64,000 nucleotides of DNA from Octopus sinensis. Its lineage: Eukaryota. Shown piece by piece: positions 28,593-63,300 of this stretch (the stretch's first letter is position 1; every line of letters begins with the position of its first letter). Made by a program: the position numbers and the translations under genes. The DNA lies in contig NC_043014.1 of NCBI RefSeq assembly GCF_006345805.1, forward strand, positions 620,001-684,000, in the 5' to 3' direction. The notes beneath the pieces were generated by a model. The model was not told the DNA's origin and ran no database searches. It saw only the letters and a program-made list of their open reading frames with translations.

Positions 28593-30640
28593 TGAAAATT
28601 CGCAGCAATTCTTGTGTTTATGACGACGCCAAACAATGCCAGATGTTAATTCTTGAGTGTGTTGTTCTCTATAACTTGTTATTCTTCCATACAACACGAC
28701 AATTGGCTGCCACCAGCGACGTGTCTGGAATTTCTCTGCAAACTCAAAGATCTCATTTCGAAACCACTTTACAAAGAATTCTTCATTATAAAAACAATTC
28801 CAGTTCTTGTGAAGCGGTGTCAAGCGGGAAATCCAAGACTAGCAAACCATGTAAGTCAAATTCTGATTTTCCTTGGTTTTATTTCCAACCAGTCTTTTTC
28901 TTGTGTTATTGTCTTGCTCTTTGCACAGACAGACAAACGATTGTTGATATTTGCCATAGATTTCGAACAGAGGAATCAATAAATGAATCTGATTGGAAAA
29001 TCTGTTTTGCTTCTCCAGTTCTTGTTGGCTTTGAAGAAAAATTGAAAAATTCTCACCTTCTCTTACAAGAACTGGCTGTCGTTTTCAAAACGTTCAATTC
29101 TTGTCTCCCTCTTACCGAAACTAATTCTAGATCTGATGTTTCTCTCTCGCAGAACCCATATAAGCCACTTGTTACTTATATTAAGGCCCATTCCCTTTAT
29201 ACAAAGAATATGTTTGAAGCAGTCCTGCAACTTTTCCAGGAGGAAGACACGACCTACTACACTGACCTACAGTCCGTATTATTCCTCAATCTCCAGGCCT
29301 GTTGTTATTTCAAATTGGGCAATTGTTGGAGTGCCGTAGAAAGATTTCAAGCAGCTTTAAAACTCGACTTTTCTTTTCTTGTTCCTTTATACAACGTTGC
29401 CGTTGTCTATCAACAACAGAAACACGTTCAGGCGGAATTGGACACTTTGAAGCATCTCACGTCTGCTTTAAATTCTACAACTTCCATTCAACACAACATC
29501 GTTCATTTGGGTGAAGACAATCAACTGAAACTAAGTCGGTCTTTAGACATGTACGGGGCACCCCTACGTCTACCTTATATCATGTATCTTACTTGCAGAC
29601 GATGTCTCCAAGAGAACCATTTAGACGAAGCATCTGAACATTATCTTGATCTTTTAGGTTATTTCAGAGAGAACCATTTCCTTCAGCAGTCTGAGACATA
29701 TATGCTATCCTGGCCTTTACCCAGCATCACAGAAATCCATCTGGAAGCAGCGTTTTGTATGTTAAAATCCGGAAAATACGACGAATGTGTTATCATTTGC
29801 GACTGGTTGTTATCTTGTGTGAATGGTGACAATTCTAAAGAATATCTTCACGCCAGTTCAATGATGTCTTCTCAATTGAATAGGTCTGATGAAGAAGAAG
29901 ACTATTTTTTACTGAGAGGTTCCCAGTTCTCCAAAGATCGGAACTGTTCTATGACAAATTTTGGTAATTCTCCTGACCAGGACCATAGCAATGGCACTAA
30001 CAATTCTTTATCTCATCTTGCAACCACATTACTTGCTTTACTGTACAAAGCTGATTCCCTGGCCCATATTGACCAACTGGACAATGCTTTACAAACTTTG
30101 CAACTTGCAACCCAAACTGTCCAAGAAAATCCTCATCTGTTAAGTAAAGTCTTACCTCTTCAGCAAACTTCAGAGAAATGTCAAAAAGGAGATAACAGCT
30201 CAGCCGTTCCATTTTTAGGTGATGCCACTGACGCCCTCACCCCATTCCTCTCTGTTGTTCAAGCTGTCTACAACAACACTGCAGTCCTACTTCAGAGCAG
30301 GCACCAGTACCAAGATGCTGTGCATTGCTTCCGCCTGGGTCTTCAGATTTCACCAAACAACCTTCTGCTTTCTTTCAACTGTGTCTTGACCCTGATTCGC
30401 TTGAAACAGTTTGAGAGTGCAGCTGACCTGTGGACAGCATATCGTGAGATGAAAGGTAGTAAAACAGCTTTGCATAAACTATTAAAAGCGAAAAGAACTC
30501 AGTTTGGAAGCTTCAAGGACCAAAAAGAGTCCCTGAAACCATCATCAAAATACACAGACGAACCATCTTTGTTTGTTGTTTTACAACTGGACATTGCTAT
30601 TTTGGAGAATGTTCTTAGAGCAAGAGACAAAGCACTTTAG
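28592..30640 (+). CDS. FANCG: Fanconi anemia group G (XRCC9)-like TPR protein, main uninterrupted ORF (682 aa from ATG 28592; frame open from 28541)
   Basis: [89 protein letters not shown] and [32 protein letters not shown] align to remembered human FANCG TPR segments ([55 protein letters not shown]). Confidence 0.9.
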   Translation: [682 protein letters not shown]

Positions 30641-33954: not shown

Positions 33955-34530
33955 TTGTATCTCTTGCTATACTTTTTTGGTTGACAATCAGTGGGTCGTA
34001 CCCTTCAACAGGGTGCTCTACAAGACATTTTATGCATGCATCAATGTAGAATTCTGTAATTCTGTCAAATCCATACGAATGCAAGTACGTTACCAAAAGA
34101 TCAGACAGAGCTGTTTTTCAAATGAAATCTACATGATCAACAGATTTTACAAACGATGAAGTGACTATTTTCAAAACTGGATGCTACATATCCACCAATG
34201 AAGCCACATGGAGAACTTTAGGATTCTCAATTCATGGGACATGGCAAAAATGATACCATTTTCATTCCAAAAAATCCGCTAAACCCAACAGACTGCCCCC
34301 GTCACCCTATGCAGACACTTCAATTCCCCCTCAAACTCAGCTTCTCCATGACAATTAACAAAGTACAAGGTCAGTCGCTGAAAGTTGTTGGATTGGACCT
34401 TCGAGCATTGTGCTTTTCACATGGACTGTTCTACATTGGTTGTTCCAGAATTGACCATCCAGACAACTTATTCGTCTACGCTCCAGAAGGAAAAAAACCA
34501 AAAATGTCATTTACAAAGCAACCCTACAGT
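33955..34530 (+). mobile_element. Internally deleted Helitron (Rep fragment fused to Pif1 helicase C-terminus)
   Basis: VDNQWVVPFN..INVEFCNSVKSI and DEVT..YISTNEATWR..FSIH (Rep), directly followed by IFIPK..LQFPLKLSFSMTINKVQGQSLKVVGLDL..CFSHG.FYIGCSR (helicase motifs V-VI). Confidence 0.92.
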
Positions 34531-42990: not shown

Positions 42991-45064
42991 ATTCCTTTTA
43001 CTGTTTTCCCTCACCTCATATATATGCGTAGGTATGTGTGTGTGTGTATGTATGATTGCCAGTGCTCTGCTGAAGCTGCCAATTATGAAGTTTGGCACCA
43101 GACCATTCATCAGTCTGTCTCCGGCTTCAAAAGTGCATCACACGGGGCTGTCTTTGAGGAGAAAACCATAAGGAAGAACTGTGGCATGGCAGCACCAAAC
43201 CCTAAACAGAATTAAGCTTACAGCCATTTCTGTTTGTCTTGCATTGACCAAGTCAGACCCTGTTGACATGAAACCAACAGGGACGGTCCTCTTTTGTGCA
43301 TCTTTGCTCTTAAAGCAGCAACAGCCATTATGTGTGTGTGTGTGTGTGTGTGTGTAGTGGCCCTTAATCTTCATATTGTATCAAGATGAATATGATAATG
43401 GGCTGACCCCAATGTTGCATACAATATCTGGGTCACTGCTTTATTTTTGTTTCTGAGTTCAAACCACACCAACATCTGCTTCACTTCTAATGTCGGGGCG
43501 GGGGAGAGGGGGCAATAAAGATATGTACCAGTAATAATTTAGGCTCTCTGCAACTCACTAAACACGTCACTGCAATCGTTGCTACAGAAACTGGCGCCGT
43601 GCCAGACATCATGAGGAATACAAACATATGGTGTTGTTGTATCTCTCTAAAACTAGAAACGGTTCTCACAAACAAGTGATGAATGTATGAGTGACAGAGC
43701 CGTGTCTGTGGGGCAGGAAACCTGATAGCAGCCATTCGCTTATTGGGTTAGCAGCTAATTGGGGTGGGGTGGGGTGGGTGGGGCGGGGGCAATTATATTA
43801 CTTGTTAATTAGATGTGCAAGTGGGAGTTGTGGTGGTCATGCCTTTCTTTAAGGGAGATAGGGCAGATGGCAGCACCAGTCTCTGAATGTTAAATGGTTT
43901 TTTTGTAGAGAGAAAGAGAGAGAGAAGCAATGTAACTGATGAAGGAGGAGGAGGGGGTAAGAAAGAACTATGAAAGGAGGAAGAGAAGAACAAGTAGAGG
44001 AGGAAGATGAGGATGAATGAGATGAGCAGCTTTTGTAAGAAGTGTTTCCATGGTTCTGCTCCAGACTGGGTTGGCCATTTCTCTCAAGACCTTTGCATGA
44101 TTATTTGCTATAGGTCATTCCTTTCCCAAGTAAAGCATATGATCAAAGACATTCCAACTATGACTATCCCATCTTTCATGTCACAAATGCCGTGTATCCT
44201 CAGACTTATTCTTTTTTCTCCTTTTTCTTTTTGACGATAGGGTGTTTGGCTGCTCTCTTTAGCAATTTGATCAACCAGCTAAAGGCTGTGTTGTTGGTTT
44301 CCTACACCAGAATATTGATGAAACCAATTTTTAATTGTACCAAGAGAGGTAAAGAACTGTTAGTCAATTATATTGACCCCCCTCCCCCATATATGACTGG
44401 TATATCTTAATAACCTCTTTCCCCTCACACTCACACACACACACTTCTGGAAGGATGAACGGCAAAACTGAATGCAGTTTCAGGTATAGTGTATCTAGGA
44501 TTACATTATACTGACCCTAGTATGTGACTGGTACCTTACTCTATTGGACACGTGGGAGGATGATAAGCAGAATTGATATTGGTGGGTTTTGAACTCAGAA
44601 TGTGAGGAATTGGAAGAAATAGCACAAAGAATTTTTCCTGATGCTTCACTGATTCTGCCAATCCACTGCCCTAATAGTAATAACAACAACAACAATAACA
44701 AAAAAGGGATTAAAACTAATGAGTTTGATACAGTTCTCTATCTGGGGTATGAACACTCCATCATGGGAGTTGGCTTTCATTGGCCTTCTGGAAATTAAAA
44801 AGGAATGTTTAAAGAGAGAAAAAAAACCCAACAAAAAACAAATAAATGTAAAAATGTTCCAAGATTCTGGGAGAAGTTCCAAGGTTGACAACTTTCACTA
44901 AATCCATTAAAGTCTTTGTGGCTCAAACAAAAGTTTCTCTGACGCTGCACGACCTTCATGAGACCTTGGTGAGGTTCCTGCACCAACACGATCAGTGCAG
45001 GGCTTTCAAAGATAATAATGATAGTCTTTTCTACTCTAGGCACAAGACCTGAAGTTTGGGGGAA

Positions 45065-45490
45065 AGGGGGCCAGTCGATTACGTCAACCCCAGTGTGTAA
45101 CTGGTACTTATTTCATCGACCTCGAAAAGGATGAAAGGCAAAGTCAACCTCATCGGGATTTGAACTCAGAACGTAGCGACAGGTGAAATACTGCAAAGCA
45201 TTTTGCCCAGTGTGCTAACGATTCTGTCAGCTCACCACCTTAATAATAATAATAATAATAGTAATAATAATAATGATTTCAAATTTTGGCACGAGGCCAA
45301 AAATATCAGGAGAAGGGATAAGTCAATTACATCGACCCCAGTGCGTAACTGGGACTTATTTCATCGACCCCGTGGGGATGAAAGGCAAAGTCGACCTTGG
45401 TGGAAATTGAACTCAGATCGTAGCGGCAGACAAAATACTGCTATGCATTTCACCCAGCTTGCTAACGATTCTGCCAGTTTGCTTAACAAC
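45065..45490 (-). mobile_element. Two tandem copies of a second tRNA-derived SINE, family C
   Basis: Head g(a/t)gagct(g/a)gcagaatcgttagc...gagttcaaat, body gtcgactttgcctttcatcc..ggggtcgat; separated by (TAA)n. Other copies at ~8200-8370, 12370-12580, 15900-16190, 16970-17240, 44500-44670, 60420-60540. Confidence 0.85.
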
Positions 45491-45706
45491 AACAACAACA
45501 ATAATAATAATGGCCATTTGAAAGGTGTGTCAGAGAGATATTTAAATGGAATTCTGGAACATTATTATTAATCACAGAATGATGGCAGAGTTTGGTGAGG
45601 AGCAGAGACCGAATAAATATAAAACTCCACTGACAAGACACGTGAATCCTGATTAACAAACATAATGCAGCAAAGCAAGTCTTAAAGAATTTGTCTTTGA
45701 CAGTTT

Positions 45707-45902
45707 CTACGAGTTCTCGCCAACAGTAGCATAGGTAGAATCTGAGTCGGAATCATCATAAGATCTTTTCCAGTTATTCTTGGACGTGTTGGGGTCAAAT
45801 CGCACAGCATAGGATGAGTCATAACGGCTTAAGTGGTCGTACAGGTGTTTGTCTTTTCTCAAATGATTGGGTGATGACAGGTTGTGGTTTAATTGATTTA
45901 AC
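45707..45902 (-). CDS. Same gene: terminal exon (LNQLNHNLSSPNHLRKDKHLYDHLSRYDSSYAVRFDPNTSKNNWKRSYDDSDSDSTYATVGENS*)
   Basis: Acceptor ttgctttgctttctag|, phase 2, open to TAG at 45707-45709; five Tyr including YDHL and STYATV. Confidence 0.82.
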
Positions 45903-46478
45903 CTAGAAAGCAAAGCAAAAATATATATAATTAGACAAAGAAATAAATAATTAGCTAATGAAATAGATAATTCACCATCATTTTGATGTCCACTTTCCCA
46001 TGGGTCAAACAGAATTCACTGATGCTGTTCTTGTCCCCTAACCTTCCCTTGTTTCCAAGCAACGTGATATTTCCTTCATGGCCAAACAGGTTTCCATGGA
46101 AGATTGAAAATGAAGAACATTGCTTAAGTGATGTTGACAATCATTGATAATCATTGAATGAAATCATAACAAGGGACTCCAAACACACACACACCTGACA
46201 AACCTGCTGAATTCATTCAGGAGATACATGTAGTAGAAGACTTGCCCCGAAGGGCCAAGCACTAGAACTCCATCAAAAGCCACATGGCTATCAAGTGAAC
46301 TTCTTGAACTCACAGCTTTGCCGGTCCCTCTGTGCATGTAAATACACACACACACACACACACAAATATCTGTTTGTTAATGTCCCCATTAAGTACCAAT
46401 CTACACAATAAGGTAGTTTCAAGAAGGACTGCCCCCAACTGCCAGGAACTACTTGCAACAATGTCAACCTCCACTTAC

Positions 46479-46592
46479 TTGTTCTTCTTGGAGCCATTGA
46501 TCAGGGTCGTCTGATATGGAATCACAGTTGATGTCGGCCGATTCCCTGACGTGTCTCGAGATCTTTGTGTAGACTTGATTTTCTTACAGTAA
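46479..46592 (-). CDS. Same gene: juxtamembrane cytoplasmic exon (YCKKIKSTQRSRDTSGNRPTSTVIPYQTTLINGSKKN-K)
   Basis: Acceptor ttctcttcctctag|, donor AA|GTAAGT; 114 nt, phase 2-2; basic stop-transfer residues directly after the TM. Confidence 0.85.
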
Positions 46593-47974
46593 CTAGAGGA
46601 AGAGAAGAAACCAGATGATGGTGTGGGGGAAGCAGGATATTTTAGTGCTGCAGGGTGGGGGGTGGCATTAGGGGTAGCAACATCCCAGCTGTCCCAGCGT
46701 CGTCCTCTTTACACCAACTCTGCAATCACCACCACTGATGTCACAACTACCACCAACTTACAACAGCCTCTACAACAATCACCACTAAGTGTGCTGTGTA
46801 ACATTATTCCATACAACCAGCCACTGCCAACCAAAGACGGAGCTTCTAAGCAGCGCCTAGACCTGCAAGAAATTGCAACCAATTTTCCCTCAGATTACAT
46901 GGGAAGGTTTTAAAAAAGGAAAGGACACACTGCATAATGTAGTTCTAGTATATCTAGGAATACATTATTGAATGTGCTGAATAGTAGACGAAGTGGGAAC
47001 ATGATTAGTAAGTACTGAACACTTGAGAATGTTGAGCAGTGAGTGCACTGAGCAAGCGGTGGCTGTTTTGAGCAGCAAATGCATTAGAGCTCAAGTGTTG
47101 AGTAAGAGGTATATTGAGTAGGTGTTGACCACTTATGGTGTAAGAGTAACAAATGCATTGTGCAGCAAGTCCATTGACTGTGGTGAGCTATGTGTGAATG
47201 TATTGAGCCATGTTTGAGTGGTAGTTGCCTTGAGCAGTGAATATGTTGAGTAACGAGTGTGTTTGGCAACAAATTTATTGAGCAGTGAGTTTGTTGTGCT
47301 CCTTCCTCCAGCACCCGTGTCAGTCGTACACTGAAGGAATTGGGTGAACGATGAGGAGTGTGTGGCACTGGATTGCTTACGTAATGTGGACTGAGCAGAT
47401 AGAACTAATGCTGCCAGGCCAGGGACCCTCAACTCCTGACAGAGTTGGAAGAGTTACATTATTGGTACAGAGTGGACCTTGGGGCCATTTCGGTGAAGCC
47501 CCTCTCTCTGCAGATCTAAACACAGTTGATGACTTACTACAGAAGAGAAGCAATTAATTGATAATTACATTTAATTCAATAATTAAAGAATAACTGACTT
47601 CCTGCTTCAGCAGTCTGAAATCCACAAAAGTTGACCAGCAGAGGTCAGAGACCTTAACCTGGCCTTTTTCTAGAGTTTCATGCCATAGAATAAATCCCTT
47701 GTCAGTTCTACCATGATTCCCACCTTCTGAATACTTCTTAACTCATAAAAGACACCCACCCCATAGTTCTATGGTTTGACACCTCATAGTCATAAGTAGG
47801 ACCTTTGTCATTGCTAAGACATAAATATGACACTTCATAGTTGTAAAGTCATAAATATGATCCTCCTCCTATTTCTATGATGAAAGTATGATCAAGGTAT
47901 TTGCTCTCCCATCATATTCTAAGACTCCCCAACACTTGTCACCCATATCTCCAAGGGTGGGTAGAAAAACTGGT

Positions 47975-48182
47975 TTAACCCTTTCATTACTGTATTTATT
48001 TTGAGATTCTCTGTTCTTCTCTCAATTATTTTAAATATAACAAAGAATTTAGTAAAATAACTTAGTTATCATTAATCTAGTGTTATGAACATAAATTGTG
48101 ACTAAGGTTTGGTGGAAGATTTTAATTCAAAGCTTATGAAAACAAGAGCCGGTTTCAGCCGGGTTAGTAACGAAAGGGTTAA
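47975..48182. mobile_element. piggyBac-type MITE with TTAA target-site duplication
   Basis: TTAA-CCCTTTCATTAC ... GTAACGAAAGGG-TTAA (11/12 TIR match); 200-bp element with no ORF. Confidence 0.9.
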
Positions 48183-48273
48183 TGAGGTTTCACAATTGTC
48201 TGTATCAAAGATGAATTTTGCTAGGATAGATTTCAGGGTGGTAGCCATGGGATACAAAAAAAATGGGACTCAC

Positions 48274-48349
48274 CAATGGATTATTATTGACAAGATGGCC
48301 ACCAAGATGAGGACAGCACAACATAACACAATTACAGCGATTTTATAGC
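48274..48349 (-). CDS. Same gene: transmembrane exon (G-YKIAVIVLCCAVLILVAILSIIIH-C)
   Basis: Acceptor ttttctattttcag|, donor TG|GTGAGT; 76 nt, phase 1-2; ~21 consecutive hydrophobic residues. Confidence 0.85.
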
Positions 48350-49079
48350 CTGAAAATAGAAAAATTGACGGCAAAGGTCACTCAAAATATACATGCTGCA
48401 TCCATGTGTGTGTGTAGAGGCATGTATGTCCATACTGGCATGGATCGGATAAGGGGATTAAGGGGTTGAAATAAGAGAGAATAGATTAATGTAAAACTGC
48501 AGATTTTCATCCAAGAAAATTTCCTTTAAAGACGTGTTTTCTAACACTGAACGTCTCTAAAGGGATTGTCTCTGGGCAAAAAACTGCAGCCTCTGCTGTT
48601 TAAACAACAAATGTACATAAAGTGATATTGGTAACATTTATGATATAGAGCTGCTGCCTGACATGGATTCTTAGATGGTTTACACACACACACACACATT
48701 ATTTGTTTGTATAAGAGAAATGAAATGAGGAGAATAAATGTTTATTCGTTTACAGCTGTTTCATAATATTATTTAAATAACAGATGTTACACAAACTCAC
48801 ACACACATTAAATATACTTATAAATAAATATCTATGCATTTGTACACCCATATATAGAAGGGTAAAGTAAAAAAAGTAAAGTTACTTTCCCAAGTCATAC
48901 CGAGAAGGTATGGCTTCCTGGGTTCATGGCATCTATACTCCCCACCTGGGTGGGACACTGGTCCAGTGCAGATATAGATGGGTACCGAGAACCCTCACCA
49001 TTGATTCATGGTAGTCAAAAGTATCAACTCAAGGCCAGTCTTTGGTTGAGACTGTTAGCTTACTTCTCAGCACTCTTTA

Positions 49080-49109
<30 letters not shown>

Positions 49110-49115
<6 letters not shown>

Positions 49116-49665
49116 TATAGGAATCTCTTCAATAGGCAAAACCTAAAAATTAGTTTTAGTTCAACCCTAAACTTTAAAAACATAATTACACACAATGCAA
49201 CACAACAACACAAAGCCGTCTGTTCCTGCAGGGATAAAGACTTGTGCCCGCTAAATGGAGCCTGTATGACCGAGGCCATTATTTATGAAGCCACCATAAA
49301 TTCTACAAATACTAATAATACAGTTTCATCCAAGAGATATGTGGGTCTCACAGAGGGAAATTTCAAAGCAAGGTTCAACAATCACACCTTAAGCTTCAGA
49401 CACTGGAATGAATGAAGAAATACCAAATTATCCAGTAAAATATGGTTCTTAAAAGAACAAAGTGTCATCTATAAGATTTACTGGAAGACCTTGGCCAAGT
49501 GTAAACCTTATAGCAAAAGTAGTGGCAAGTGTGGTCTTTGTGATATGGAAAGATGGCTCATCTGGAAATGTTCCTTGGACCCCACTACATGTCTGAATTC
49601 AAGGACTGAAATTTTTGGATTACGTCCACATCTGACAAAATACTTGTTACGGTTTTGCCCCAGAT
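49110..49665 (+). mobile_element. Penelope-like element 3' remnant (Cys-rich linker plus GIY-YIG)
   Basis: CSCRDKDLCPLNGAC..IIYEAT..KRYVGLTEGNFKARFNNHTLSFRH, *RNTKLSSKIW, KCKPYSK..CGLC..E..I..LNSR.EI; contains in-frame stops. Confidence 0.9.
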
Positions 49666-51177
49666 CACGGCTACAATCCACATTTTTACTATGTTCCTGT
49701 ATAAGCTAACTATATGTCTTAACTTCTTTTAATTGTTTCTTTTTTAATTGTGTGAATGTGTACGTGTGTGAGTATATGTACATGTATGTATATATTTTAT
49801 ATGTATATGAGTGTGCATGTGTATATGTATGTATATGAGTGTAAAACTGTGTCCGGTGCATAAGTGTGACTTTCATACACATGTCCTCTTCATTTATACA
49901 GATATGCATATGTTTATATATTGCAGATGTAGGTGTGTAATAGGAGGGTGTATATATATTTATATATATATAATATATAATGCAGGAGTGTGAATGCATG
50001 TCTGAATATATATATATGTATAGCTCTGTCTGGCACCTGTGCGGGTGGCACGTAAAAAGCACCCACTACACTCACGGAGTGGTTGGTGTTAGGAAGGGCA
50101 TCCAGCCGTAGAAACACTGCCAGATTTGACTGGGCCTGATGAAGCCTTCTGGCTTCACAGACCCCAGTAGAACCGTCCAACCCATGCTAGCATGGAAAAC
50201 GGACGATGATGATGATGATGATGATGATGATAAATGTCTAAATATATGTGTATTATTTTACGTGTATGCCTGTAAACACCTATGTGTATATGAGGATGAG
50301 GTTACGTACACATATACATGTGTGCATGTGTATAGATATGTGTATGTATGAGTACGTACATACACATTTGTGTGTGTGTATGTGCATGTACATATGTAGA
50401 TGTGAACGCAGGAGGTTTATGTCTATGTATTGTGAGGATATGGTTGCATGTAATTTTTATTGTTTTTCTTTTTTCACTTTTCCCACCTATTAGAGTAACT
50501 TCCCTTTTTATTCAACGGTTATTTCATAGCGTCTCTTGCCATTAATAACCGATGAGAATGCATTGTAACTCTTTGCTCCAACATTTGAAACTCCGAGTGC
50601 TATAACGACAACTTTTTACTGTTTATTCTAAATTGTAACGTATATAAATATCCTCTATTTATCTAATATTGAGGTCTCATTCTTTTTTGGGTACTTTTTA
50701 TTACATATATATATATGTGTGTACACAGGTGCATGGCTTAGTGGTCACAAATGCAAGACCATGGGTTCAATCCCCAGACCGGGCATTGCATTGTGTTCTT
50801 GAGCAAAGTACTTCATTTCACGTTGCTCTGATGGACGGAGTGAGCTTATATCTACACAAACATTCGATCACTATAAACAAATGATGTGTGTGATCGATAA
50901 GAAATGGTTGAACCCTCATACATTGTCTAAGAACGGGAGAGTCCATCATAAGGGTGTACACAGGCATATATGGTTATATGGATATTTTATGTCTGTAAAT
51001 GTTGATGTAACATCTACTCTATAACTAATAAGATGATGAAACACTTGTAAACAAATGGAACAAACATATATTCTCTCACCGGTCTTCTTTTCTCTGTTCT
51101 ATTTATAGAGATTTTTGTTAGCCATGCGCTTAATGAAGAGCTGAAAGTGAGATCTGTTTGATTCTTTGAACCTCTAT

Positions 51178-51212
<35 letters not shown>

Positions 51213-52402
51213 CCCCCTGCCATCCCAGTCCTTTATATATATCATAACTGGATGCTTTTGTCATCACACCAGTCCCACCATGGGGCTATAATAGTGTGTG
51301 CACAGGCATGCCCCATCCTATTCCTTCATATTACTTCCAAGAGAAATGACAACCAGCAACGATTATCAATAAACTATAAACAAAAACCCCAGGAAATGCG
51401 CATTAGCGCCGGCAATTAACTAGCTGGTTCTAGATTATTAATTAGGGCTAATTATAGAAAATATGTCAAATTGGTACTTCAGCACGGTTCAGTTTGAAGT
51501 AGCAGGGGTAGTGGTGATGGTGGAGGGGGGGTTGAATGTTAACAAATATCTCAATACAGCAAAGATGGTTATGATGATGATGATGATGATGATAAGTAAT
51601 TATTAGCAACACACAGAGAGAAAGCTCCAGCTGACCAGGTCAGTAGAGAAGTAGACAATCAACTGGTCACCTCAGTGATCTCATATCTTTCCCAGTCCAC
51701 CTGGCTGTAAATAGGTACCCCAGGCAGATGTAGTCCACACATGTTAATGTTTTTCTATGGTGCCAAGTTCAAGCCTTACCATTGCCACCAGAGGCTCGGA
51801 TGGTTGTGGGGTCACTTCTTCAGCTGAGAACTGCACTGTGTCCTTGAGCAAGGTGCTTCATTTTAAGTGAGCTCACTTTCTGTCTTCATTCCCTCCACAA
51901 TTCACAATCCCTCCAGTACCACATGCTCCCCTCCTTCAATGCCCTTCCCACCCATCCCCACCACACTCCACTACCATTCAACTTTTCCCCAGTTTTTCAC
52001 ATCTTCTCTCTATTCTTTCCTGGCTACATTGCCATTCTACCATTCTATTTCACATCATCCTCATCATTTAGCATCCATTTTCGATGCTGGCACGGGTTGA
52101 ATGGTTCGACAGGAGCTGGCATGGCCAGAGAGCTGCACCAGGTCCCAATTATCTGTTTTGGCATGGTTTTCTACCGCCAGATGACCTTCCAACTGCCAAT
52201 CCCCTTACAAGTCAACCACAAGTGCTTTTTCTGTGGTACCATTACATCATATCATGAATAATTCTACAATTCTACGATAGAATGGACTGACGGAAGATTC
52301 AAAATATGAACGAATATAAACAGGAGAATCCATTTAAAAAGTTTTTGATATCTGTTGTGGAGGTATTGAGTGCTGCATTTGCCAAGAAATTGGTCATCAT
52401 AC

Positions 52403-52516
52403 CTGCTAAAGTTGCGAGGCAAATTTCTGCAAGGCTTCTGCCTTTTTTAGGTTTGTCAGAAACTGGACAGGAAATAAAATCTTGGAGGCTGACATCCTTC
52501 ACAGTCTGATGAATCA
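52403..52516 (-). CDS. Same gene: stalk exon (IHQTVKDVSLQDFISCPVSDKPKKGRSLAEICLATLA)
   Basis: Acceptor ttcttctgatttcag|, donor CAG|GTATGA; 114 nt, phase 1-1; only that frame is open. Confidence 0.65.
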
Positions 52517-53438
52517 CTGAAATCAGAAGAAAAATGAAGTTTAAAGAAACCAGAACCAACGACAGTCTGCAAGTTGGTAGAGTTTAACAGTTGTTGGTAT
52601 GGGACTTTGGTTTTATATATGGAGGCTGAATAGTTGCAGGGGATAAAAGACTGCAAATAATTCTGATAGGCACCAATTTATGGTTGTACGAGTTGTTGTG
52701 CAAACCAATGTTACCAAGACAGCTTTGTGCCTCTTATCAGGAGACACCTATTGCTGGACTGCATCTTGTCTGTCAACCCCTCTTATTACACTGACCCCTG
52801 TCTACCCTCAGTCACACTACCCCTGACATGCTGCCAACTGTGTGAACAGTGACAGCACTTTCTTAATGCTAGAAGCTCTGGGTCAAGAGGATCTCAACCA
52901 ATTACTGGTATCTTGATCTTTGCAATGTTAACCTTCAGGTCTTTTCCCACAATTTCAATTTTTCAAATTCAAATTTCTCATTATTTATTCAACAATTTTC
53001 ACAGCAATACCAATACAGAAAACCTCTGATCCTGGTTGCTTGATCAGGGAATCGGGGTTAAACAACAACAAGAACAAGATCAAAGACCCTTAGCGCTTGA
53101 TGCAGTTTAAAGGTCAACAAAGCTGGCTTTCCTGAAGGCATGTGTAGAGAACATTCCTCTCCATGGGGTCAATGCCTGGACTACGAAGAAAGAACTACAA
53201 GATCCCTTTCATGACATGTATCTCAGAAGTGTTCAGAACATCTCATAGCATGAACGCAAGAATTAAGAAATTTACAGACACATTCTACCTATGTCTGTAA
53301 TAATTGGTCAAAACAGGGTCGAGTTTTCTGACCCCTGCTATTTTGCTGAACAACAAGGCCATATTAGTCAGATGTTATATTTTAGAGACTTCCATTCCCC
53401 AGTAGAGGATGAACACCACTCAGCCACTTTGATGTTGT

Positions 53439-53476
<38 letters not shown>

Positions 53477-54005
53477 CATGAAATTGAGAATCTACATTTT
53501 TGATCTTGTTTCTGCTGGATAAGAAATGACCTAGGGCTGAACAGTCAGCAATTCAACCAACACAACCCCCTCTGTTGGTACTCCACAGCCACCTAAAGCC
53601 ACTCCATCCCACCTTCTGTATAACCCTAACCCTAACATCACTCTCTGACTTCCCTGCATCTTAAACAAGTAAGTCTCTCTGCTGTCATTTGATTTGCTAG
53701 AGATAACAACTAAATTCTCTTACTGTCTGAAAACAAGAAGGACTTGAGACAATGTTGTTCTTGATGTACAAAAAGGGGAAAAAATTAAATAGTCATGGCT
53801 GGAACATGTTTGGTCTGTTCCAGCTCAAATAGGGTCCACCTCATAGGACAATGTCCTCCTATATATAAACATTTGTGTTGACTTGTGGCTCTCTACATTA
53901 AATTACTAAAGAAGGTGAGGGCTTCTAGAATGGAATTCTATTGGACCTTGCTACATCATCAGTCCTGCTTCTATTCACTGATAACAGAATGTCCTCCTTT
54001 CTTAC

Positions 54006-54047
54006 ATTGTAATCCCAACAAAGATTTCTTTTGAAAACAGGTTTCAA
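54006..54047 (-). CDS. Same gene: 42-nt exon (F-ETCFQKKSLLGLQ)
   Basis: Acceptor gacttttatag|, donor AAT|GTAAGA; phase 1-1, open. Short, so it could be skipped without breaking frame. Confidence 0.55.
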
Positions 54048-54325
54048 CTATAAAAGTCACAACTGGTTCAAATATTTCATTTCTAAGAAGTCCCAACACC
54101 TCTAAACATGCAGTGAGGGACCCTTGATATAAGCAGACAATGTTCCCGATGAGCACCCACCACCTAGGTTACATTAGATAATGTATTCCTATATGGACTA
54201 GTCCTTGAAAGAGGGGATGGTCACTGCTTCATCATGTCTGCTCAATTGGACTAATTATGGAAGCAAACAGTGACTCGATCAGTTTCCAAAATATTAGGAC
54301 AAAGTAACCGTACCCGGGTACTTAC

Positions 54326-54637
54326 ATTTTGCTACCAACCAAGTCGGTGACTTAGGATCAATAGTTAGGTCTATTGCTTCATTTGCTGTGACATTGATAA
54401 CTAAAGCTCGATATAACGGTTTCTGTTCATGATGATTACGATGATGCATTGCCAAGAGGCTGGCGTCAGAGGCATTGAGGACGTAAAGTATCAACATTCC
54501 ATTGGTGAGAGTCTTCAGCCTCCAATTACATCTTGTAATAGTTTCCATATTATGTGGTGTAACAAGGAAGATTTGGTCTTCTAAATCTCTGGAATTTGTC
54601 TTGTCTGAACACACATGTTCTTTTTCATTCTTAACAT
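54326..54637 (-). CDS. Same gene: CUB-like exon (DVKNEKEHVCSDKTNSRDLEDQIFLVTPHNMETITRCNWRLK...SPTWLVAK)
   Basis: Acceptor ttttcctttggtag|, donor AAT|GTAAGT; 312 nt, phase 1-1, open; CUB-like C..LxxP..CxW pattern; sequons NAS, NVT. Confidence 0.8.
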
Positions 54638-54902
54638 CTACCAAAGGAAAACAAAAGCAAAAAATTAAAAGAAGAAAGGAAATTATAGAAAGAAACAAAT
54701 AAAATGACATCATTTTAAAACAAATCACTGACTCTCTGTTAATTGTGACAAGTAACACATGAAAATACCGCTTAGCATTTCGCCTGGTTTGCTAACAATT
54801 CTGCCAGCTCAGCACCTTAGTAATAATAATAATAATAATAATAATCTACAGATTGAATTTATAAATATTCCAATGTGTCGCTATGGGAGTTTCCACAAAC
54901 CT

Positions 54903-55051
54903 CATGTTTCTTCCAACCATAATCCATATTCCTCGGATGGCTACAGTACAGTTTGTACTGTCCATGAACAAAGACCCACCTGATGCCTATGGATATTACA
55001 AACTGTATTGTAATCAGCCCAAGAATGCAGGTGATGGTCACAAAAAACATG
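54903..55051. repeat. Imperfect ungapped inverted repeat (63-bp arms, 23-nt loop)
   Basis: 46/63 positions complementary by manual alignment. Confidence 0.85.
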
Positions 55052-55130
55052 GAAAGATGCATAGCAAAGCCTTAAAATAGTTGTAAATTCCATCCATGGA
55101 TTATTATCATCTGTAGATAAAAAACTGAGA

Positions 55131-55200
<70 letters not shown>

Positions 55201-55626
55201 CATTAAAACTCAAGAACTACCCAAACGATTAATAGTGTTGATGGTGGCAGTGGGAGTAATAACGAGAGAGAGAGAGAGAGAGTGAGTGACCACTGAACTA
55301 ACAGGCTGAAGTAGCACTGAATGAACACACATTTAGCCTTTTTGTGTGTATGTATATATATGTATGTATATGTATATATGTGTATATGTATGTGTATATA
55401 TATGTATGTATATATATGTATATATATTATCACCGTGACCGACCAGACCATCAGATGTTGCTACACATCGCCGGTCACAATGCGTTTCGCATTGTTTTTT
55501 AGCCTTTCAAATGACGCCACTCCGCTGGCTAAGAGAGCAGGCCAATATATATATTATATACGTATGTATATATATGTATATACGTATGTATATGTACGTA
55601 TATATATGTATATGTATATATATATA

Positions 55627-55676
<50 letters not shown>

Positions 55677-55679
55677 TAA

Positions 55680-56088
55680 TCAGCGTCGCCTTACTGGCAC
55701 TTATGCCTGTACTAGTAGGGTGCCAAGAACACCATCCGAGCGTGATCGTTGTGATCGTTGCCGGAGCAGCCAAATGGCTTCCGTACCCGTAAAAGGGCAC
55801 CATTTGAGCGTGATCGTTACCAACGTTGCTTCACTGGCACCTGTGTTGATGGCACGTGTAAAAAGATTCGAGCGAGGTCATTGCCAGTACTGCCTGACTG
55901 GGCACGTAAAAAGCACGAACTACACTCTCGGAGTGGTTGGCGTTAGGAAGTGCATCCAGCTGTAGAAACTATGCCAGATCAAGACAGGAGCCTGGTGCAG
56001 CCATCTGGTTGCCAGCCCTCAGTCAAAACCGTCCAACCCATGCTAGCATGGAAAACGGACGTTTAATGATGATGATGATGATGATGAT
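55680..56088 (+). mobile_element. RTE-tail SINE-like repeat, family D, ending (GAT)n
   Basis: gtaaaaagcac..cactacactc..gagtggttggcgttaggaag.gcatccagc..accgtccaacccatgctagcatggaaa..(gat)n. Copies at ~55-260, 420-570, 12580-12950, 33140-33360, 42310-42550, 50030-50230, 52070-52220, 61790-62160; shares its 3' end with the RTE at 27480-27660. Confidence 0.85.
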
Positions 56089-56395
56089 ACAGGCTGACCA
56101 AAGCCTTGTGAGTGGATTTCGTACACAGAAACTGAAAGAAAACTGTTGTATATATGTGTAGATTTATGTGTGTGTGTTTGTACCCGCACTATCGCTTGAC
56201 AACCGATGTTGGTGTGTTTACATCCCCATAATTTAACGGTTCATTACTAGGCTTACAAAGAATGAATCCCGGGGATCGATTTGTTTGACTAAAGATGGTG
56301 CTCCAGCGTGGTTGCAGTCACATGACTGAAACAAGTAAAACAACAAAACAACTATGCCATTTTAACCCTGAGAAATGCTGGGTATTTTTTTTTTT

Positions 56396-56790
56396 TTTAC
56401 TTGTTTCAGTCATTTTGACTGCGGCCATGCTGGAGCACCGCCTTTAATCGAGCAATTCGACCCCGGGACTTATTCTTTGTAAGCCCAGTACTTATTCTAT
56501 CGGTCTCTTTTTGCTGAACCGCTAAGTAACGGGGACGTAAACACACCAGCATCGGTTGTCAAGCAATGCTAGGGGGACAAATACAGACACACAAACATAC
56601 ACGCACATACATATATATACATATATACGACGGGCTTCTTTCAGTTTCCGTCTACCAAATCCACTCACAAGGCATTGGTCGGCCCGAGGCTATAGTAGAA
56701 GACACTTGCCCAAGGTGCCACGCAGTGGGACTGAACCCGGAACCATGTGGTTGGTTAGCAAGCTACTTACCACACAGCCACTCCTGCGCC
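56396..56790 (-). mobile_element. tRNA-derived ~400-bp SINE, family A, full-length
   Basis: Head ggcgcaggagtggctgtgtggt (A box)...gggttcagtccc (B box), CORE-like ccttgggcaagtgtctt, internal (TA/TG)n, A-rich tail. Confidence 0.9.
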
Positions 56791-57362
56791 TATCTCTGCT
56801 TGTTATTACTATATTTATCTTGCATTAAATTGGCACAGATCGGAACAATGCCATAAACCTGCTGTTGCAAATTGGAATCATTAGCCTGCAGCCAACATAA
56901 ATAACAGAGGAGCTGTTAAGTGCATCCTCAGAAACGTTTCCCATGCACACACACACACACACACACGTCTGCATGCAATGGTTTCCGTCTACCAATTCCA
57001 ACGATGAGAGTCAACCTATGGCTGCAGAAGACATTAGTTAAAGGCATTGTGCAGTGGGTTTGAACCTGGAATGGTGAAGATCAGAGCTGATTTCATTGGG
57101 ATTTAAATGTCATGAATATTAAAGAATCCTGTGCCTAACCTGCCAAGCATATGGCACTTTGAAATTGTTGTATTCTTGACATCCACAGTTTTCAAAACTA
57201 CAGGATGTACAATGGACTTAGAATTCAGAGGAATGTGTGTGTGTGTGTTGATATACAAGTGAATGTGTGAGAGAAAGAGACAGCAAAAACACACACACAC
57301 ACACACACAGAGAGATAGACAAAGAGAGGGAAAGAAAAATAAAGAGACAGTGACATGGAACA

Positions 57363-57397
<35 letters not shown>

Positions 57398-57398
57398 C

Positions 57399-57614
57399 CT
57401 GGGATGCAGCCATAAAGTATTCTGGCATCTATTGATGCATTCTGACAAGAATGTGGCATGTTGCACTTTCGGTATCTGTTGCAATAAAACTTGAGATCTT
57501 GAAGACATTTCCAATCACTGTCCATCAAGGCATTTAACTTTTCAATGAACATCACACTCCCATTATTGCAGGCAAATGTCTGGGCCCTGATGTGGGTGGA
57601 GCAAAATTCAGTTC
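57399..57614 (-). CDS. Unnamed type-I membrane protein: SUEL/Gal-lectin-like exon (TEFCSTHIRAQTFACNNGSVMFIEK...CLQDLKFYCNRYRKCNMPHSCQNASIDARILYGCIP)
   Basis: Acceptor tttctctcctcctcag|, donor CAG|GTATGT; 216 nt, phase 1-1, open; 7 Cys in SUEL-like spacing ending Y-x-C-x-P; N-glycosylation sequons NGS, NAS. Confidence 0.75.
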
Positions 57615-58234
57615 CTGAGGAGGAGAGAAAAATTTATACAAAATATATATTTTTTTTTGTGAAAATGTCTGAAGATAGGGAGAGACCCAGGAGAAGTTTA
57701 TGGATTATGCAACTGGCATTCTGTTGGTTCTAATAATGAGGATTCCAGTTGATCCAATAGTGGAACAGCCTGCTTATGAAATCAACTTATAAGTGGTTGA
57801 ATACCCCACAGACATGCATACCTTTAATGTAATTCTTGGGGAGATTCAGTGTGACACAGAATGTGACAAGGCTGGCCCCTTGTGAATTACAGGTACAGCT
57901 AATTTTTGCCAGGTGAGTGGATGGAAGCAACATGAAATAAAGTGTCTTGCTAAAGGACACAGTGTGTCCCAGGGTATGAAACTCGTGACCTTGCAATCAT
58001 GAGGTGAATATTCAAACAATTAACCATGGGTGCTCCCAATAATGATGTTCTTAGAAAACAGGGGTCAAATTTAGTAGAATTGGGGGCCAATGGGTGGAGG
58101 CTACAATGACTGATTTGGTTCTTCAAGTTTCTCAGTTTGATTCTTAACACTTTGTATGCCATGAATCCACCCAACACCCAATATGTTGATTTGATATTGC
58201 CTAAAATCACCCATATGAAATCACTCATCTCTCT

Positions 58235-58641
58235 TTACTCTTTTACTCTTTTACTTGTTTCAGTCCTTTGACTGTGGCCATGCTGGAGTGCCGCCTTTAG
58301 TCGAGCAAATCGACCCCAGGACTTATTCTATGTAAGCCCAGTACTTATTCCATCGGTCTCTTTTGCCGAACTGCTAAGTGACGGGGACGTAAACACACCA
58401 GCATCGGTTGTCAAGCAATGCTAGGGGAACAAACACAGACAAACAAACACATACACACACACACACACACATATATATATACATATATACCACTGGCTTC
58501 TTTCAGTTTCCGTCTACCAAATCCACTCACAAGGCATTGGTCGGCGCGGGGCTATAGCAGAAGACACTTGCCCAAGATGCCACGCAGTGGGACTGAACCC
58601 GGAACCATGTGGTTGGTTAGCAAGCTACTTACCACACAGCC
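58235..58641 (-). mobile_element. SINE family A copy
   Basis: Near-identical to 56396-56790; (AAAGAGTA)n tail. Confidence 0.9.
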
Positions 58642-62789: not shown

Positions 62790-63300
62790 GTCATAGCTGG
62801 AACAGCTTTGATTGTAAGGTGTGTTGGATCAGGACTGACCTTGGGTTAAATAACCCACAGCCACTGACCACTACCTTCGCTGACCATATCTTAACTGCTG
62901 GCCAAGCTGAACACCACCACACCAATCTAGGAATATCTTCAATTGTTATGGGCAATGTCCCTCCTCTTAGGTCAACAGGCAACAGATTCAGAAGAGCAGA
63001 GACCATTGTAGTAGTGGTTAGACAACACCAAGAGAGGACACAGCTTAAAAGGAGACAAGTATATCTAGGACTACACTAACCAAAGTGACTTTCGTTATTC
63101 TTAAGATGGAAGGATTTGATAATGCGTGTGTGGAGGGTGTAAACTAGGTGGAGTTAGGGTAGCCTTAAACAGGGGTTTAGTAATTGTTTAGAGCTCAAAT
63201 ATCTTCTGTTTCTGCTAAGTCTTCAACACAACAGTTGGGGGAAAGGGAAGAGGCAGTGTCCTGTTAGGGGACACAGGGAATTAGGGACTTGACATTGGCT
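62790..63300 (-). mobile_element. Highly decayed L2/CR1-like RT fragment
   Basis: Degenerate GVPQG-like segment near 63230-63280 and IEDIPRLVWWCS.W..KI near 62930; weak. Confidence 0.3.

What the first reader, a model, noticed from the sequence alone, without database searches (positions are those of the whole stretch)
45707..57614. Hidden 7-exon gene for a SUEL-like + CUB-like single-pass receptor
Seen: seven GT-AG exons chain in consistent phase (1-1, 1-1, 1-1, 1-1, 1-2, 2-2, 2-stop; 1070 nt) into ~355 aa: Cys-rich domain, CUB-like domain, stalk, hydrophobic TM, basic stop-transfer segment and ~100-aa tail. Four N-glycosylation sequons lie on the predicted outside. Knowledge: SUEL domains occur in latrophilins, EVA-1 and rhamnose-binding lectins; CUB domains are extracellular interaction modules. 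Inference: an uncharacterised, probably lophotrochozoan or cephalopod lineage-restricted, cell-surface receptor (immune or neural). I do not recognise an ortholog. The signal-peptide exon was not located.
Basis: partly seen in the sequence, partly recalled or inferred. Interest (0 to 1): 0.75.

Follow-up and report, generated by a model that had tools for sequence, protein, structure and literature searches.

The report
Annotated octopus orphan CUB receptor gene
The exons are real: they are six of the seven coding exons of an already annotated but uncharacterised Octopus sinensis gene (LOC115221306) for a cephalopod-restricted single-pass membrane glycoprotein with a degenerate lectin-like domain and a divergent CUB domain.

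Summary
The gene is real, lies on the minus strand, and is already annotated.

**Identity.** Six GT-AG exons (57614-57399, 54637-54326, 52516-52403, 48349-48274, 46592-46479, 45902-45707; 1028 nt) translate exactly to residues 31-371 of RefSeq XP_029647326.1, "uncharacterized protein LOC115221306" of Octopus sinensis. The signal-peptide exon lies about 45.5 kb upstream of the first of these exons, outside the window.

No annotated isoform or ortholog retrieved contains it.

**Evidence of function.**
- Orthologs exist in O. bimaculoides, O. vulgaris, Argonauta hians, a cuttlefish and another decapodiform.
- All splice sites are conserved in O. bimaculoides, and dN/dS is 0.37.
- The cuttlefish ortholog sits uninterrupted on 20 short, transcript-like contigs.

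**Domains.**
- The CUB call is supported by a cubilin profile hit (E=4.7e-5), a spermadhesin top Foldseek hit, and a Pfam CUB match in a distant gastropod relative.
- The SUEL-like call is moderately supported. hhalign against the latrophilin RBL domain gives 74-80% probability and a score of 31, against a shuffle maximum of 20. There is no Pfam match, and the sugar-binding motifs are missing.

**Distribution and function.** An exhaustive profile search of 1.84 billion proteins found five family members. Function is untested.

**Verdict.** An ordinary orphan receptor gene that is not hidden.

The parts
57399..57614 (-). Coding exon 2 of LOC115221306 (216 nt, phase 1-1). It encodes aa 30-101, a 7-Cys SUEL/RBL-like domain.
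   Evidence: Exact match to XP_029647326.1. Splice sites ctcctcag| and |gtatgt, conserved in O. bimaculoides. hhalign against the latrophilin RBL domain.
54326..54637 (-). Coding exon 3 (312 nt, phase 1-1). It encodes aa 102-205, a divergent CUB domain with only the first disulfide pair (C111, C138).
   Evidence: Cubilin profile hit. Foldseek top hit is a spermadhesin CUB domain. The SPSYPR...CxWR motif is kept in decapodiform orthologs.
52403..52516 (-). Coding exon 4 (114 nt, phase 1-1). It encodes aa 206-243, the stalk, with conserved C222.
48274..48349 (-). Coding exon 5 (76 nt, phase 1-2). It encodes the transmembrane helix YKIAVIVLCCAVLILVAILSIIIH.
   Evidence: Hydropathy peak 3.52 at aa 249-267. 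98.7% nucleotide identity to O. bimaculoides.
46479..46592 (-). Coding exon 6 (114 nt, phase 2-2). It encodes the basic stop-transfer CYCKKIK and the conserved V(I/T)PY(Q/H)TTL motif.
45707..45902 (-). Last coding exon (196 nt including TAG). It encodes the tail with the conserved YDHL and DSDSTYATVGE motifs.
54006..54047 (-). It is not in any annotated isoform or ortholog retrieved.
   Evidence: Top-scoring filler. It is 42/42 identical with AG/GT kept in O. bimaculoides, but about 16 other non-exonic 60-nt islands are also at least 97% identical. It is absent from P0011, P0014, P0016, P0017, P0012 and P0013.

Best explanation
**What it is (shown).** The region holds six of the seven coding exons of Octopus sinensis LOC115221306 (XP_029647326.1, 371 aa), on the minus strand. 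The protein is a type I single-pass membrane glycoprotein with these parts in order:
- a signal peptide, encoded 45.5 kb upstream and outside the window;
- a 70-residue, 7-cysteine domain that looks like a shortened SUEL/rhamnose-binding-lectin (RBL) fold lacking the YGR, DPC and KYL sugar-binding motifs;
- a divergent CUB beta-sandwich that keeps only the first disulfide;
- a short stalk;
- one TM helix followed by CYCKK;
- a 102-residue cytoplasmic tail with three motifs conserved across cephalopods: PY(Q/H)TTL, YDHL and an acidic DSDSTYA(T/I)VG at the C-terminus.

**How it most likely works (inferred).** It acts as a cell-surface binding or adhesion (co)receptor. The lectin-derived and CUB modules bind a protein ligand or partner receptor rather than a sugar. 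This is how the latrophilin RBL domain and the CUB domains of neuropilin, Kremen and Neto are used. The conserved YxxPhi/acidic-cluster tyrosine motifs drive endocytic sorting and/or phosphotyrosine docking.

**Evolutionary status.** The gene is under purifying selection and is single-copy in the searches run here. It is confined to cephalopods, with one distant gastropod relative of the same architecture.
For: **Identity.**
- The six window exons translate exactly to XP_029647326.1 residues 31-371.
- The annotated gene range is on CM016876.1.

**Function retained.**
- The ORF is intact and all GT-AG sites are conserved in O. bimaculoides.
- dN/dS is 0.37 overall: SUEL-like 0.22, CUB-like 0.44, tail 0.26.
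- Exons are 90-99% identical at the nucleotide level, against about 88% mean identity over the aligned region, which is mostly intronic.
- Orthologs exist in Argonauta, a cuttlefish and another decapodiform.
- The cuttlefish ortholog is encoded uninterrupted on 20 short Logan contigs, which indicates spliced mRNA.

**CUB domain.**
- The domain profile hits cubilin CUB5-8 at E=4.7e-5.
- In the AlphaFold model, residues 110-210 have pLDDT 64-77. The best Foldseek hit is spermadhesin 1spp_A (TM 0.62), followed by Kremen, Neto2, meteorin, PCPE-1 and NRP2 CUB domains.
- The gastropod relative passes Pfam CUB (22.7 bits against a cut-off of 21.4).

**SUEL-like domain.**
- hhalign against the latrophilin RBL domain gives probability 73.5-80% and E=1.5-3e-5.
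- The score is 30-31, against 300 column shuffles with mean 10.5, SD 2.1 and maximum 19.8.
- Five cysteines align, including the C2-C8 and C5-C6 partners.

**Topology.** Hydropathy and sequon positions fit a type I membrane protein.

**Shared gene structure with the gastropod relative.** Phase-1 introns sit at the same domain borders.
Against: - No Pfam family reaches its cut-off on the octopus protein, and there is no Gal_Lectin hit even at E<=10.
- The AlphaFold model is poor overall (mean pLDDT 49) and below 60 over the Cys-rich domain, so the SUEL fold is not confirmed structurally.
- The gastropod Cys-rich domain alone does not match the RBL domain.
- The Foldseek list also contains other beta-sandwich folds.
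- No expression, localisation, ligand or phosphorylation data were available, so the mechanism is inference from domain types and motifs.
- No octopus transcript contig carrying the full ORF was found. Only the genome records carry it.
Confidence: 0.8

Rival explanations
1. The exon chain is a chance assembly of open segments flanked by AG/GT in AT-rich, repeat-rich intergenic DNA, and there is no gene.
For: - The small exons are easy to obtain by chance.
- Codon-usage scores are only weakly above the null: p about 0.5 for exon 57614-57399 and 0.08 for exon 54637-54326.
- The first homology search returned nothing.
Against: - The exons match an annotated RefSeq protein exactly.
- The ORF and splice sites are conserved across species, with dN/dS 0.37.
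- Orthologous spliced transcripts exist in cuttlefish.
- One search was a false negative of the word index, as shown.
Confidence: 0.01
2. The N-terminal Cys-rich domain is not SUEL/RBL-derived. It is an unrelated, lineage-specific disulfide-rich module, and the resemblance is convergent or compositional.
For: - Pfam Gal_Lectin gives no hit.
- A PDB profile search with the domain finds no lectin.
- The YGR, DPC and KYL motifs and about 20 residues are missing.
- The gastropod domain alone scores 0.3% probability.
- The AlphaFold model is not confident over this domain.
- The hhalign E-value would not survive correction for a whole-library search.
Against: - The hhalign score is about 10 SD above composition-preserving shuffles.
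- The alignment spans nearly the whole domain, with five cysteines in register.
- The predicted beta-beta-alpha-beta order agrees with the RBL topology (topology recalled from the latrophilin RBL structure 2JX9).
Confidence: 0.35
3. It is a working sugar-binding lectin receptor, a true rhamnose/galactose-binding pattern-recognition receptor of innate immunity.
For: - SUEL-like similarity.
- The CUB domain evolves fastest (dN/dS 0.44; 81% amino-acid identity between two Octopus species, against about 95% for the rest of the protein). This would fit a recognition surface.
Against: - The motifs that form the sugar site in RBLs (YGR, DPC, KYL) are deleted or replaced in all cephalopod orthologs.
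- No expression or binding data are available.
Confidence: 0.1
4. It is a divergent neuropilin-family member: a CUB ectodomain plus a neuropilin-type TM and cytoplasmic domain.
For: Weak Pfam DUF3481 (neuropilin C-terminal domain) hits over the TM and juxtamembrane region: E=0.023 in O. sinensis and 0.14 in Argonauta. NRP2 CUB is among the Foldseek hits.
Against: - The scores (12-15 bits) are far below the 28.5-bit cut-off and fall mainly on the TM helix.
- The hit is absent in the cuttlefish ortholog.
- There are no F5/8C or MAM domains, and no C-terminal SEA motif.
Confidence: 0.03
5. It is a decaying or non-functional lineage-specific gene, a pseudogene in the making.
For: - The O. vulgaris model lacks the Cys-rich exon.
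- O. bimaculoides isoforms X2 and X3 lack the signal peptide.
- Both domains are degenerate relative to their families.
Against: - The ORF is intact in four or more species spanning octopods and decapodiforms.
- dN/dS is 0.37.
- The tail motifs are conserved across all cephalopod sequences.
Confidence: 0.03

Closest known systems
Octopus bimaculoides LOC106879878 (XP_014785088.1; UniProt A0A0L8G181, 'CUB domain-containing protein') and the Argonauta hians, Sepia pharaonis and other decapodiform orthologs
   Same: Same 371-aa architecture. The O. bimaculoides protein is 90% identical over its full length (94% over the TM and tail), has identical exon lengths and conserved splice sites, and has the same FANCG-like neighbour gene by locus numbering.
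   Different: None in kind. All are uncharacterised predictions. Decapodiform orthologs keep the CUB 'SPSYPR' signature that octopods have lost.
Gigantopelta aegis LOC121382277 (XP_041367782.1, 591 aa)
   Same: Signal peptide, then a 7-Cys domain, a CUB domain, a stalk, a TM segment and a Tyr-rich tail. Phase-1 introns sit at the same domain borders, and the first intron is long.
   Different: Only about 24% identity over the Cys-rich domain. Its CUB domain is canonical, with the second disulfide region, and passes Pfam. Its tail is much longer and unrelated.
SUEL/rhamnose-binding-lectin domain proteins: latrophilins (ADGRL1-3, PDB 2JX9), EVA-1/EVA1C, fish-egg RBLs (CSL3, PDB 2ZX2)
   Same: An N-terminal lectin-type Cys-rich module on a surface receptor. 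The profile similarity spans the domain, with five aligned cysteines.
   Different: The domain is about 20 residues shorter and has 7 rather than 8 cysteines. The YGR, DPC and KYL sugar-site motifs are absent. There is no Pfam PF02140 match. It is followed by a CUB domain and one TM helix, not by olfactomedin/GAIN/7TM (latrophilin) or a second SUEL domain (EVA-1).
CUB-domain single-pass receptors: Kremen1/2, neuropilins, NETO1/2, DCBLD1/2, CDCP1; spermadhesins as the fold prototype
   Same: A CUB beta-sandwich next to the membrane on a type I protein. Foldseek hits include spermadhesin, Kremen, Neto2, NRP2 and PCPE-1, and the domain profile hits cubilin.
   Different: A single, degenerate CUB with only one disulfide. 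The partner domain is SUEL-like rather than Kringle/WSC, LDLa, F5/8C or LCCL. There is no detectable sequence orthology to any of these.

Membership tests
RefSeq gene LOC115221306 (Octopus sinensis) | The window exons translate to the annotated protein and lie at its genomic position. | tested here: met
   Exact identity to residues 31-371. The locus on CM016876.1 overlaps the window at 100% identity.
CUB domain (Pfam PF00431) | Match to the Pfam HMM above the gathering score. | tested here: not met
   No CUB hit on the octopus, Argonauta or decapodiform proteins; the best is CUB_M02D8_5_2nd at E=0.065 in P0013. Met only by the gastropod relative (22.7 bits against 21.4).
CUB domain (Pfam PF00431) | Significant profile similarity to solved CUB domains, including the G-x-I-x-SP-x-YP...C-x-W signature. 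| tested here: met
   The A4 profile hits cubilin CUB5-8 (3kq4_B) at E=4.7e-5, on all four CUB repeats at the signature. SPSYPR...CxWR is present in decapodiform orthologs.
CUB domain (Pfam PF00431) | Beta-sandwich (jelly-roll) CUB fold. | tested here: inconclusive
   The AlphaFold region 110-210 has pLDDT 64-77. The top Foldseek hit is spermadhesin 1spp_A (TM 0.62), and several other CUB domains follow. Other beta-sandwich folds score similarly.
CUB domain (Pfam PF00431) | Four conserved cysteines forming two disulfides. | tested here: not met
   Only C111 and C138 (the first pair) are present in the cephalopod proteins.
SUEL / rhamnose-binding lectin domain (Pfam PF02140 Gal_Lectin) | Match to the Pfam HMM. 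| tested here: not met
   No hit at E<=10 on the domain or on the full proteins.
SUEL / rhamnose-binding lectin domain (Pfam PF02140 Gal_Lectin) | Profile-profile similarity over the whole domain. | tested here: inconclusive
   hhalign probability 73.5-80%, E=1.5-3e-5 for this single comparison. Score 31 against a shuffle maximum of 19.8. The template profile is only three latrophilins.
SUEL / rhamnose-binding lectin domain (Pfam PF02140 Gal_Lectin) | Eight cysteines and the YGR, DPC and KYL motifs that shape the sugar site. | tested here: not met
   Seven cysteines, five of them aligned. The YGR region falls in a gap, and DPC and KYL are replaced.
SUEL / rhamnose-binding lectin domain (Pfam PF02140 Gal_Lectin) | Binding of rhamnose or galactose. 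| not testable with these tools
   Needs recombinant protein and a glycan assay.
Type I single-pass membrane protein | An N-terminal signal peptide, one TM helix, and sequons confined to the N-terminal side. | tested here: met
   One hydropathy peak (3.52, aa 249-267). A hydrophobic N-terminus on exon 1. Four sequons at N47-N183. The AlphaFold helix at 234-281 is consistent. No dedicated signal-peptide or TM predictor was available.
Neuropilin family | The CUB-CUB-F5/8C-F5/8C-MAM architecture and the neuropilin C-terminal domain (PF11980). | tested here: not met
   Only sub-threshold PF11980 hits (12-15 bits against 28.5) over the TM segment. No F5/8C or MAM domains.

The most novel reading that the evidence does not exclude
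A cephalopod-born orphan receptor, assembled by exon shuffling of a lectin-derived module and a CUB module (all phase 1-1 exons). Its fast-evolving CUB face and conserved tyrosine tail would serve a cephalopod-specific recognition task, for example sucker chemotactile sensing, neural wiring or haemocyte recognition. A deeply conserved 42-nt cassette at 54047-54006 might insert 14 residues between the CUB domain and the stalk in a tissue-specific isoform.
Probability: 0.12. Interest if true: 0.45.

Novelty: new member of a known kind. Interest (0 to 1): 0.2.

Why it matters
The result has little wider consequence. The gene already sits in RefSeq and UniProt as an uncharacterised prediction, and it is built from common extracellular modules.

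What this work adds:
- It confirms that reading raw sequence recovered a true gene model almost exactly.
- It adds a better domain annotation: a degenerate SUEL/RBL-like domain in front of the CUB domain.
- It provides evidence of purifying selection.
- It gives a clear statement of taxonomic range: cephalopods plus one distant gastropod relative.

If a specific expression pattern were found, for example in suckers, brain or haemocytes, the gene would be one more candidate among the lineage-restricted surface receptors of cephalopods.

Tried and rejected
The first script timed out. Later enumeration showed that the two small middle exons were underdetermined.
2. **First homology search with the two large exons joined.** It returned nothing. 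This was a false negative of the word index, since the same residues are 81-90% identical to P0011 and 100% identical to P0014. Conclusions drawn from that negative were dropped.
3. **Spliced protein as query.** This was respected, and an alignment of returned proteins was used instead.
4. **Codon-usage log-likelihood trained on the neighbouring FANCG-like exon.** It was too weak to decide.
5. **Pfam on exons and full proteins.** Nothing reached a cut-off. DUF3481, ECSCR and SIT hits fall on the TM segment and were judged compositional.
6. **PDB sequence searches.** Searches with the full-length and the Cys-rich profiles gave only chance-level hits, such as PETase and the 5-HT3 receptor.
7. 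**AlphaFold with 3 and with 9 sequences.** Mean pLDDT was 49 both times. Only the CUB region was usable.
8. **The 42-nt candidate exon.** It is perfectly conserved. This is not distinctive, because many intronic islands are equally conserved.
9. **Literature searches.** Searches for the locus and protein accessions, the SRA runs and the domain combination found nothing relevant.
10. **Rfam scan of the window.** No hits.

Full report
**1. Where the window comes from**

A 683-codon ORF at 28589-30640 (+) is 100% identical to Octopus sinensis LOC115221305, a FANCG-like TPR protein. Fetched loci from assembly GCA_006345805.1 match the window at 100% identity. This places the window at CM016876.1:620001-684000.

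**2. The observation**

The feature lies on the minus strand.
An acceptor ...ctcctcag precedes 57614, and the TAG stop ends at 45707.
- Two large, high-complexity, splice-flanked open segments were immediately visible: 57614-57399 (216 nt) and 54637-54326 (312 nt).
- With a stringent polypyrimidine and donor filter, only 26 candidate exons of 60 nt or more exist on both strands of the whole window. These two are among the only three high-complexity candidates of 200 nt or more outside the FANCG-like gene.
- They lie in sequence that is not repeated within the window.
- The TM exon (48349-48274), the stop-transfer exon (46592-46479) and the last exon (45902-45707) have strong sites and fit the stated phases.

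**3. Is it a gene?**

The first homology search, with the two large exons joined, found nothing. Codon usage was inconclusive.

A second search, with the TM and tail exons plus candidate middle exons, hit three proteins of 369-386 aa:
- O. bimaculoides XP_014785088.1, named 'CUB domain-containing protein' in UniProt
- an Argonauta hians protein
- a Logan-assembled protein

Their sequences contain the two large exons as well, so one search was a false negative of the word index.

The 90% cluster of the O. bimaculoides protein contains XP_029647326.1, 'uncharacterized protein LOC115221306 [Octopus sinensis]', 371 aa. Six window exons total 1028 nt: 57614-57399, 54637-54326, 52516-52403, 48349-48274, 46592-46479 and 45902-45707. 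They translate exactly to its residues 31-371.

Residues 1-29 (MGSIFHGFLRLVEFTFLVYMLMWSFDPVQ) are not encoded anywhere in the window. In the genome they lie 45.5 kb upstream of 57614, about 39 kb beyond the window end.

No annotated isoform (X1-X3 of O. bimaculoides, or the O. vulgaris model) and no ortholog contains 14 extra residues.

The most likely candidate is 54047-54006.
- It is 42/42 identical, with AG/GT retained, in O. bimaculoides.
- About 16 other non-exonic 60-nt islands in the same alignment are at least 97% identical. This is therefore not evidence of coding.

**4. Evidence that the gene is functional**

- In the O. bimaculoides locus, all seven exons have the same lengths and GT-AG borders, and the ORF is intact.
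- Nei-Gojobori dN/dS is 0.37 overall: SUEL-like 0.22, CUB-like 0.44, stalk 0.13, tail 0.26.
- Exon nucleotide identity is 90-99%, against about 88% mean identity over the aligned region, which is mostly intronic.
- The cuttlefish-type ortholog (386 aa) is encoded without interruption on 20 Logan contigs of 1.4-2.6 kb from different SRA runs. This is what spliced mRNA assemblies look like.
- The Sepia pharaonis genome annotation carries the same C-terminus.

**5. How widespread is it?**

A profile of three orthologs was searched exhaustively against 1.84 billion representative proteins. Only five proteins scored E<=0.001.
- Four are cephalopod sequences.
- The fifth (E=3.3e-5) is Gigantopelta aegis XP_041367782.1, from a vent gastropod.

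The gastropod protein has the same layout: signal peptide, 7-Cys domain, CUB domain, stalk, TM segment and a Tyr-rich tail. Its CUB domain passes the Pfam gathering score.

Its gene has a long first intron. It has phase-1 introns at the signal/Cys-rich border, at the Cys-rich/CUB border (the same position, two residues after the last cysteine), and at the CUB/stalk border.

The family is therefore cephalopod-restricted with one distant molluscan relative. It appears single-copy in octopus, because no paralogous cluster was returned.

**6. Domains**

*CUB.* The octopus protein does not reach any Pfam cut-off. Four lines of evidence support a divergent CUB:
- Decapodiform orthologs keep the CUB signature (FLVSPSYPR...C-x-W-R) that octopods have eroded to FLVTPHNMETITRCNWR.
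- A seven-sequence profile of the domain hits cubilin CUB5-8 (3kq4_B) at E=4.7e-5, on all four repeats at that signature.
- In the AlphaFold model built with nine sequences, residues 110-210 have pLDDT 64-77.
- Its best Foldseek match is the spermadhesin CUB prototype 1spp_A (TM 0.62), followed by aSFP, Kremen, Neto2, meteorin, PCPE-1 and NRP2. These are interleaved with other beta-sandwich folds.

Only the first CUB disulfide pair is present.

*SUEL-like.* There is no Pfam Gal_Lectin hit. A PDB profile search gave only chance-level matches.

The PDB search confirmed it as identical to 2JX9 and supplied ADGRL2 and ADGRL3.

hhalign of the six-sequence Cys-rich profile against these three gave:
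- 73.5% probability and E=3e-5 over 62 columns, nearly the whole domain, with five cysteines in register;
- a local re-run score of 31.4, against 300 column-shuffled controls with mean 10.5, SD 2.1 and maximum 19.8.

The alignment places the YGR region in a gap and replaces DPC and KYL. From established knowledge of RBL structures, those motifs build the sugar site. A lectin-derived but probably non-sugar-binding module is therefore the best reading.

Three caveats apply:
- The template profile is shallow.
- The E-value holds for one planned comparison only.
- The gastropod domain alone does not score, and AlphaFold is not confident over this domain (pLDDT below 60). The predicted beta-beta-alpha-beta order does agree with the RBL topology.

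*Membrane topology.*
- There is one hydropathy peak (3.52, aa 249-267), followed by CYCKKIK.

*Tail.* Three motifs are conserved in all cephalopod sequences: V(I/T)PY(Q/H)TTL, H-x-YDHL and the C-terminal DSDSTYA(T/I)VG. They match YxxPhi sorting or SH2-docking patterns, and the last follows an acidic, serine-rich cluster. This is motif-level inference only.

**7. Mechanism**

*Shown:* the gene model, the conservation, the topology features and the CUB-type similarity.

*Inferred:* a surface (co)receptor or adhesion protein.
- Its lectin-derived and CUB modules bind a protein partner.
- Its tail directs endocytosis and/or phosphotyrosine signalling.
- The all-phase-1 domain exons suggest assembly by exon shuffling.

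The CUB domain is the fastest-evolving part: 81% amino-acid identity between two Octopus species, against about 95% elsewhere. This would fit a recognition surface but is equally compatible with relaxed constraint.

**8. Comparison and novelty**

- The gene is already in RefSeq and UniProt as an uncharacterised prediction, so it is not hidden.
- No paper in the searchable library mentions its accessions.
- In kind, it is another type I receptor built from known extracellular modules. The SUEL-like-plus-CUB combination is not one I can match to a characterised protein, and nothing relevant was found in the literature search.
- The weak neuropilin C-terminal-domain hits were judged compositional.

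**9. Verdict**

It has one spurious or unverified 42-nt exon, and one exon lies outside the window. Interest is low.

Noticed in passing
window 28359-30640 (+): A two-exon gene for a FANCG-like TPR protein: LOC115221305, 669 aa, 100% identical. It has weak but significant similarity to vertebrate Fanconi anaemia group G proteins. It is the upstream neighbour of the target gene, and the adjacent locus numbers in O. bimaculoides (LOC106879875 and LOC106879878) suggest conserved synteny.
   Followed up: partly
window about 1-22295 (-): The 5' part of a BEACH/WD40/PH_FAN gene (NSMAF/FAN-like, 921-aa product) is annotated on the minus strand. It ends at window 22295 and runs towards lower coordinates. 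Its exons were not mapped.
   Followed up: no
window 4876-5924 (+): Two overlapping ORFs in different frames both match reverse transcriptase RVT_1 (E=6.6e-21 and 1.6e-8). This is a frameshifted non-LTR retrotransposon remnant, lying inside the NSMAF-like gene region.
   Followed up: partly
window 45014-45511, 50026-50274, 55901-56243, 56383-56793, 58234-58641: Copies of interspersed repeat families, each with 5-11 matches elsewhere in the window. They lie in the introns and 3' flank of the target gene. Some translate to ...GTEPGTMWLVSKLLTTQP, which looks like a tRNA-derived SINE. Rfam gave no hit.
   Followed up: partly
window 54294-54758 (-): The 154-codon ORF that contains the CUB exon extends upstream through the 60-nt polypyrimidine tract. 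There it reads MMSFYLFLSIISFLLLIFCFCFPL, which looks like a signal peptide. It is intron sequence in the annotated model and in the orthologs.
   Followed up: yes
window 54006-54047 (-): A 42-nt phase 1-1 open segment with AG/GT flanks is 100% identical in O. bimaculoides, within a 122-nt block at 96% identity. It could be a conserved cassette exon or an intronic regulatory element, but equally conserved islands are common in these introns.
   Followed up: partly
protein level (P0015, P0016, P0017): The O. vulgaris model (299 aa) joins the signal exon directly to the CUB exon, skipping the Cys-rich exon. This is in frame because the exon is phase 1-1. O. bimaculoides isoforms X2 and X3 start downstream and lack the signal peptide. 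Whether these are real isoforms or annotation artefacts is unknown.
   Followed up: no
tool behaviour: The word-indexed protein search missed proteins that contain the 175-aa query: the O. sinensis member is 100% identical, and the cluster representative is 81-90% identical. It found them when queried with the C-terminal half. A 'no hit' from that tool is not reliable on its own.
   Followed up: yes
window 62840-63043 (-): A 204-nt open segment with strong splice-like flanks lies inside the 45.5-kb first intron of the target gene. It gave no hit when included in the homology query. Its region aligns to O. bimaculoides at about 87% identity, which is intron level.
   Followed up: partly
window 34315-34505 (+): A short ORF (...VQGQSL...GLFYIGCSR...) has a weak helicase C-terminal match (Herpes_Helicase, E=0.0057, below the cut-off). 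It resembles a PIF1/Helitron-type helicase remnant.
   Followed up: no
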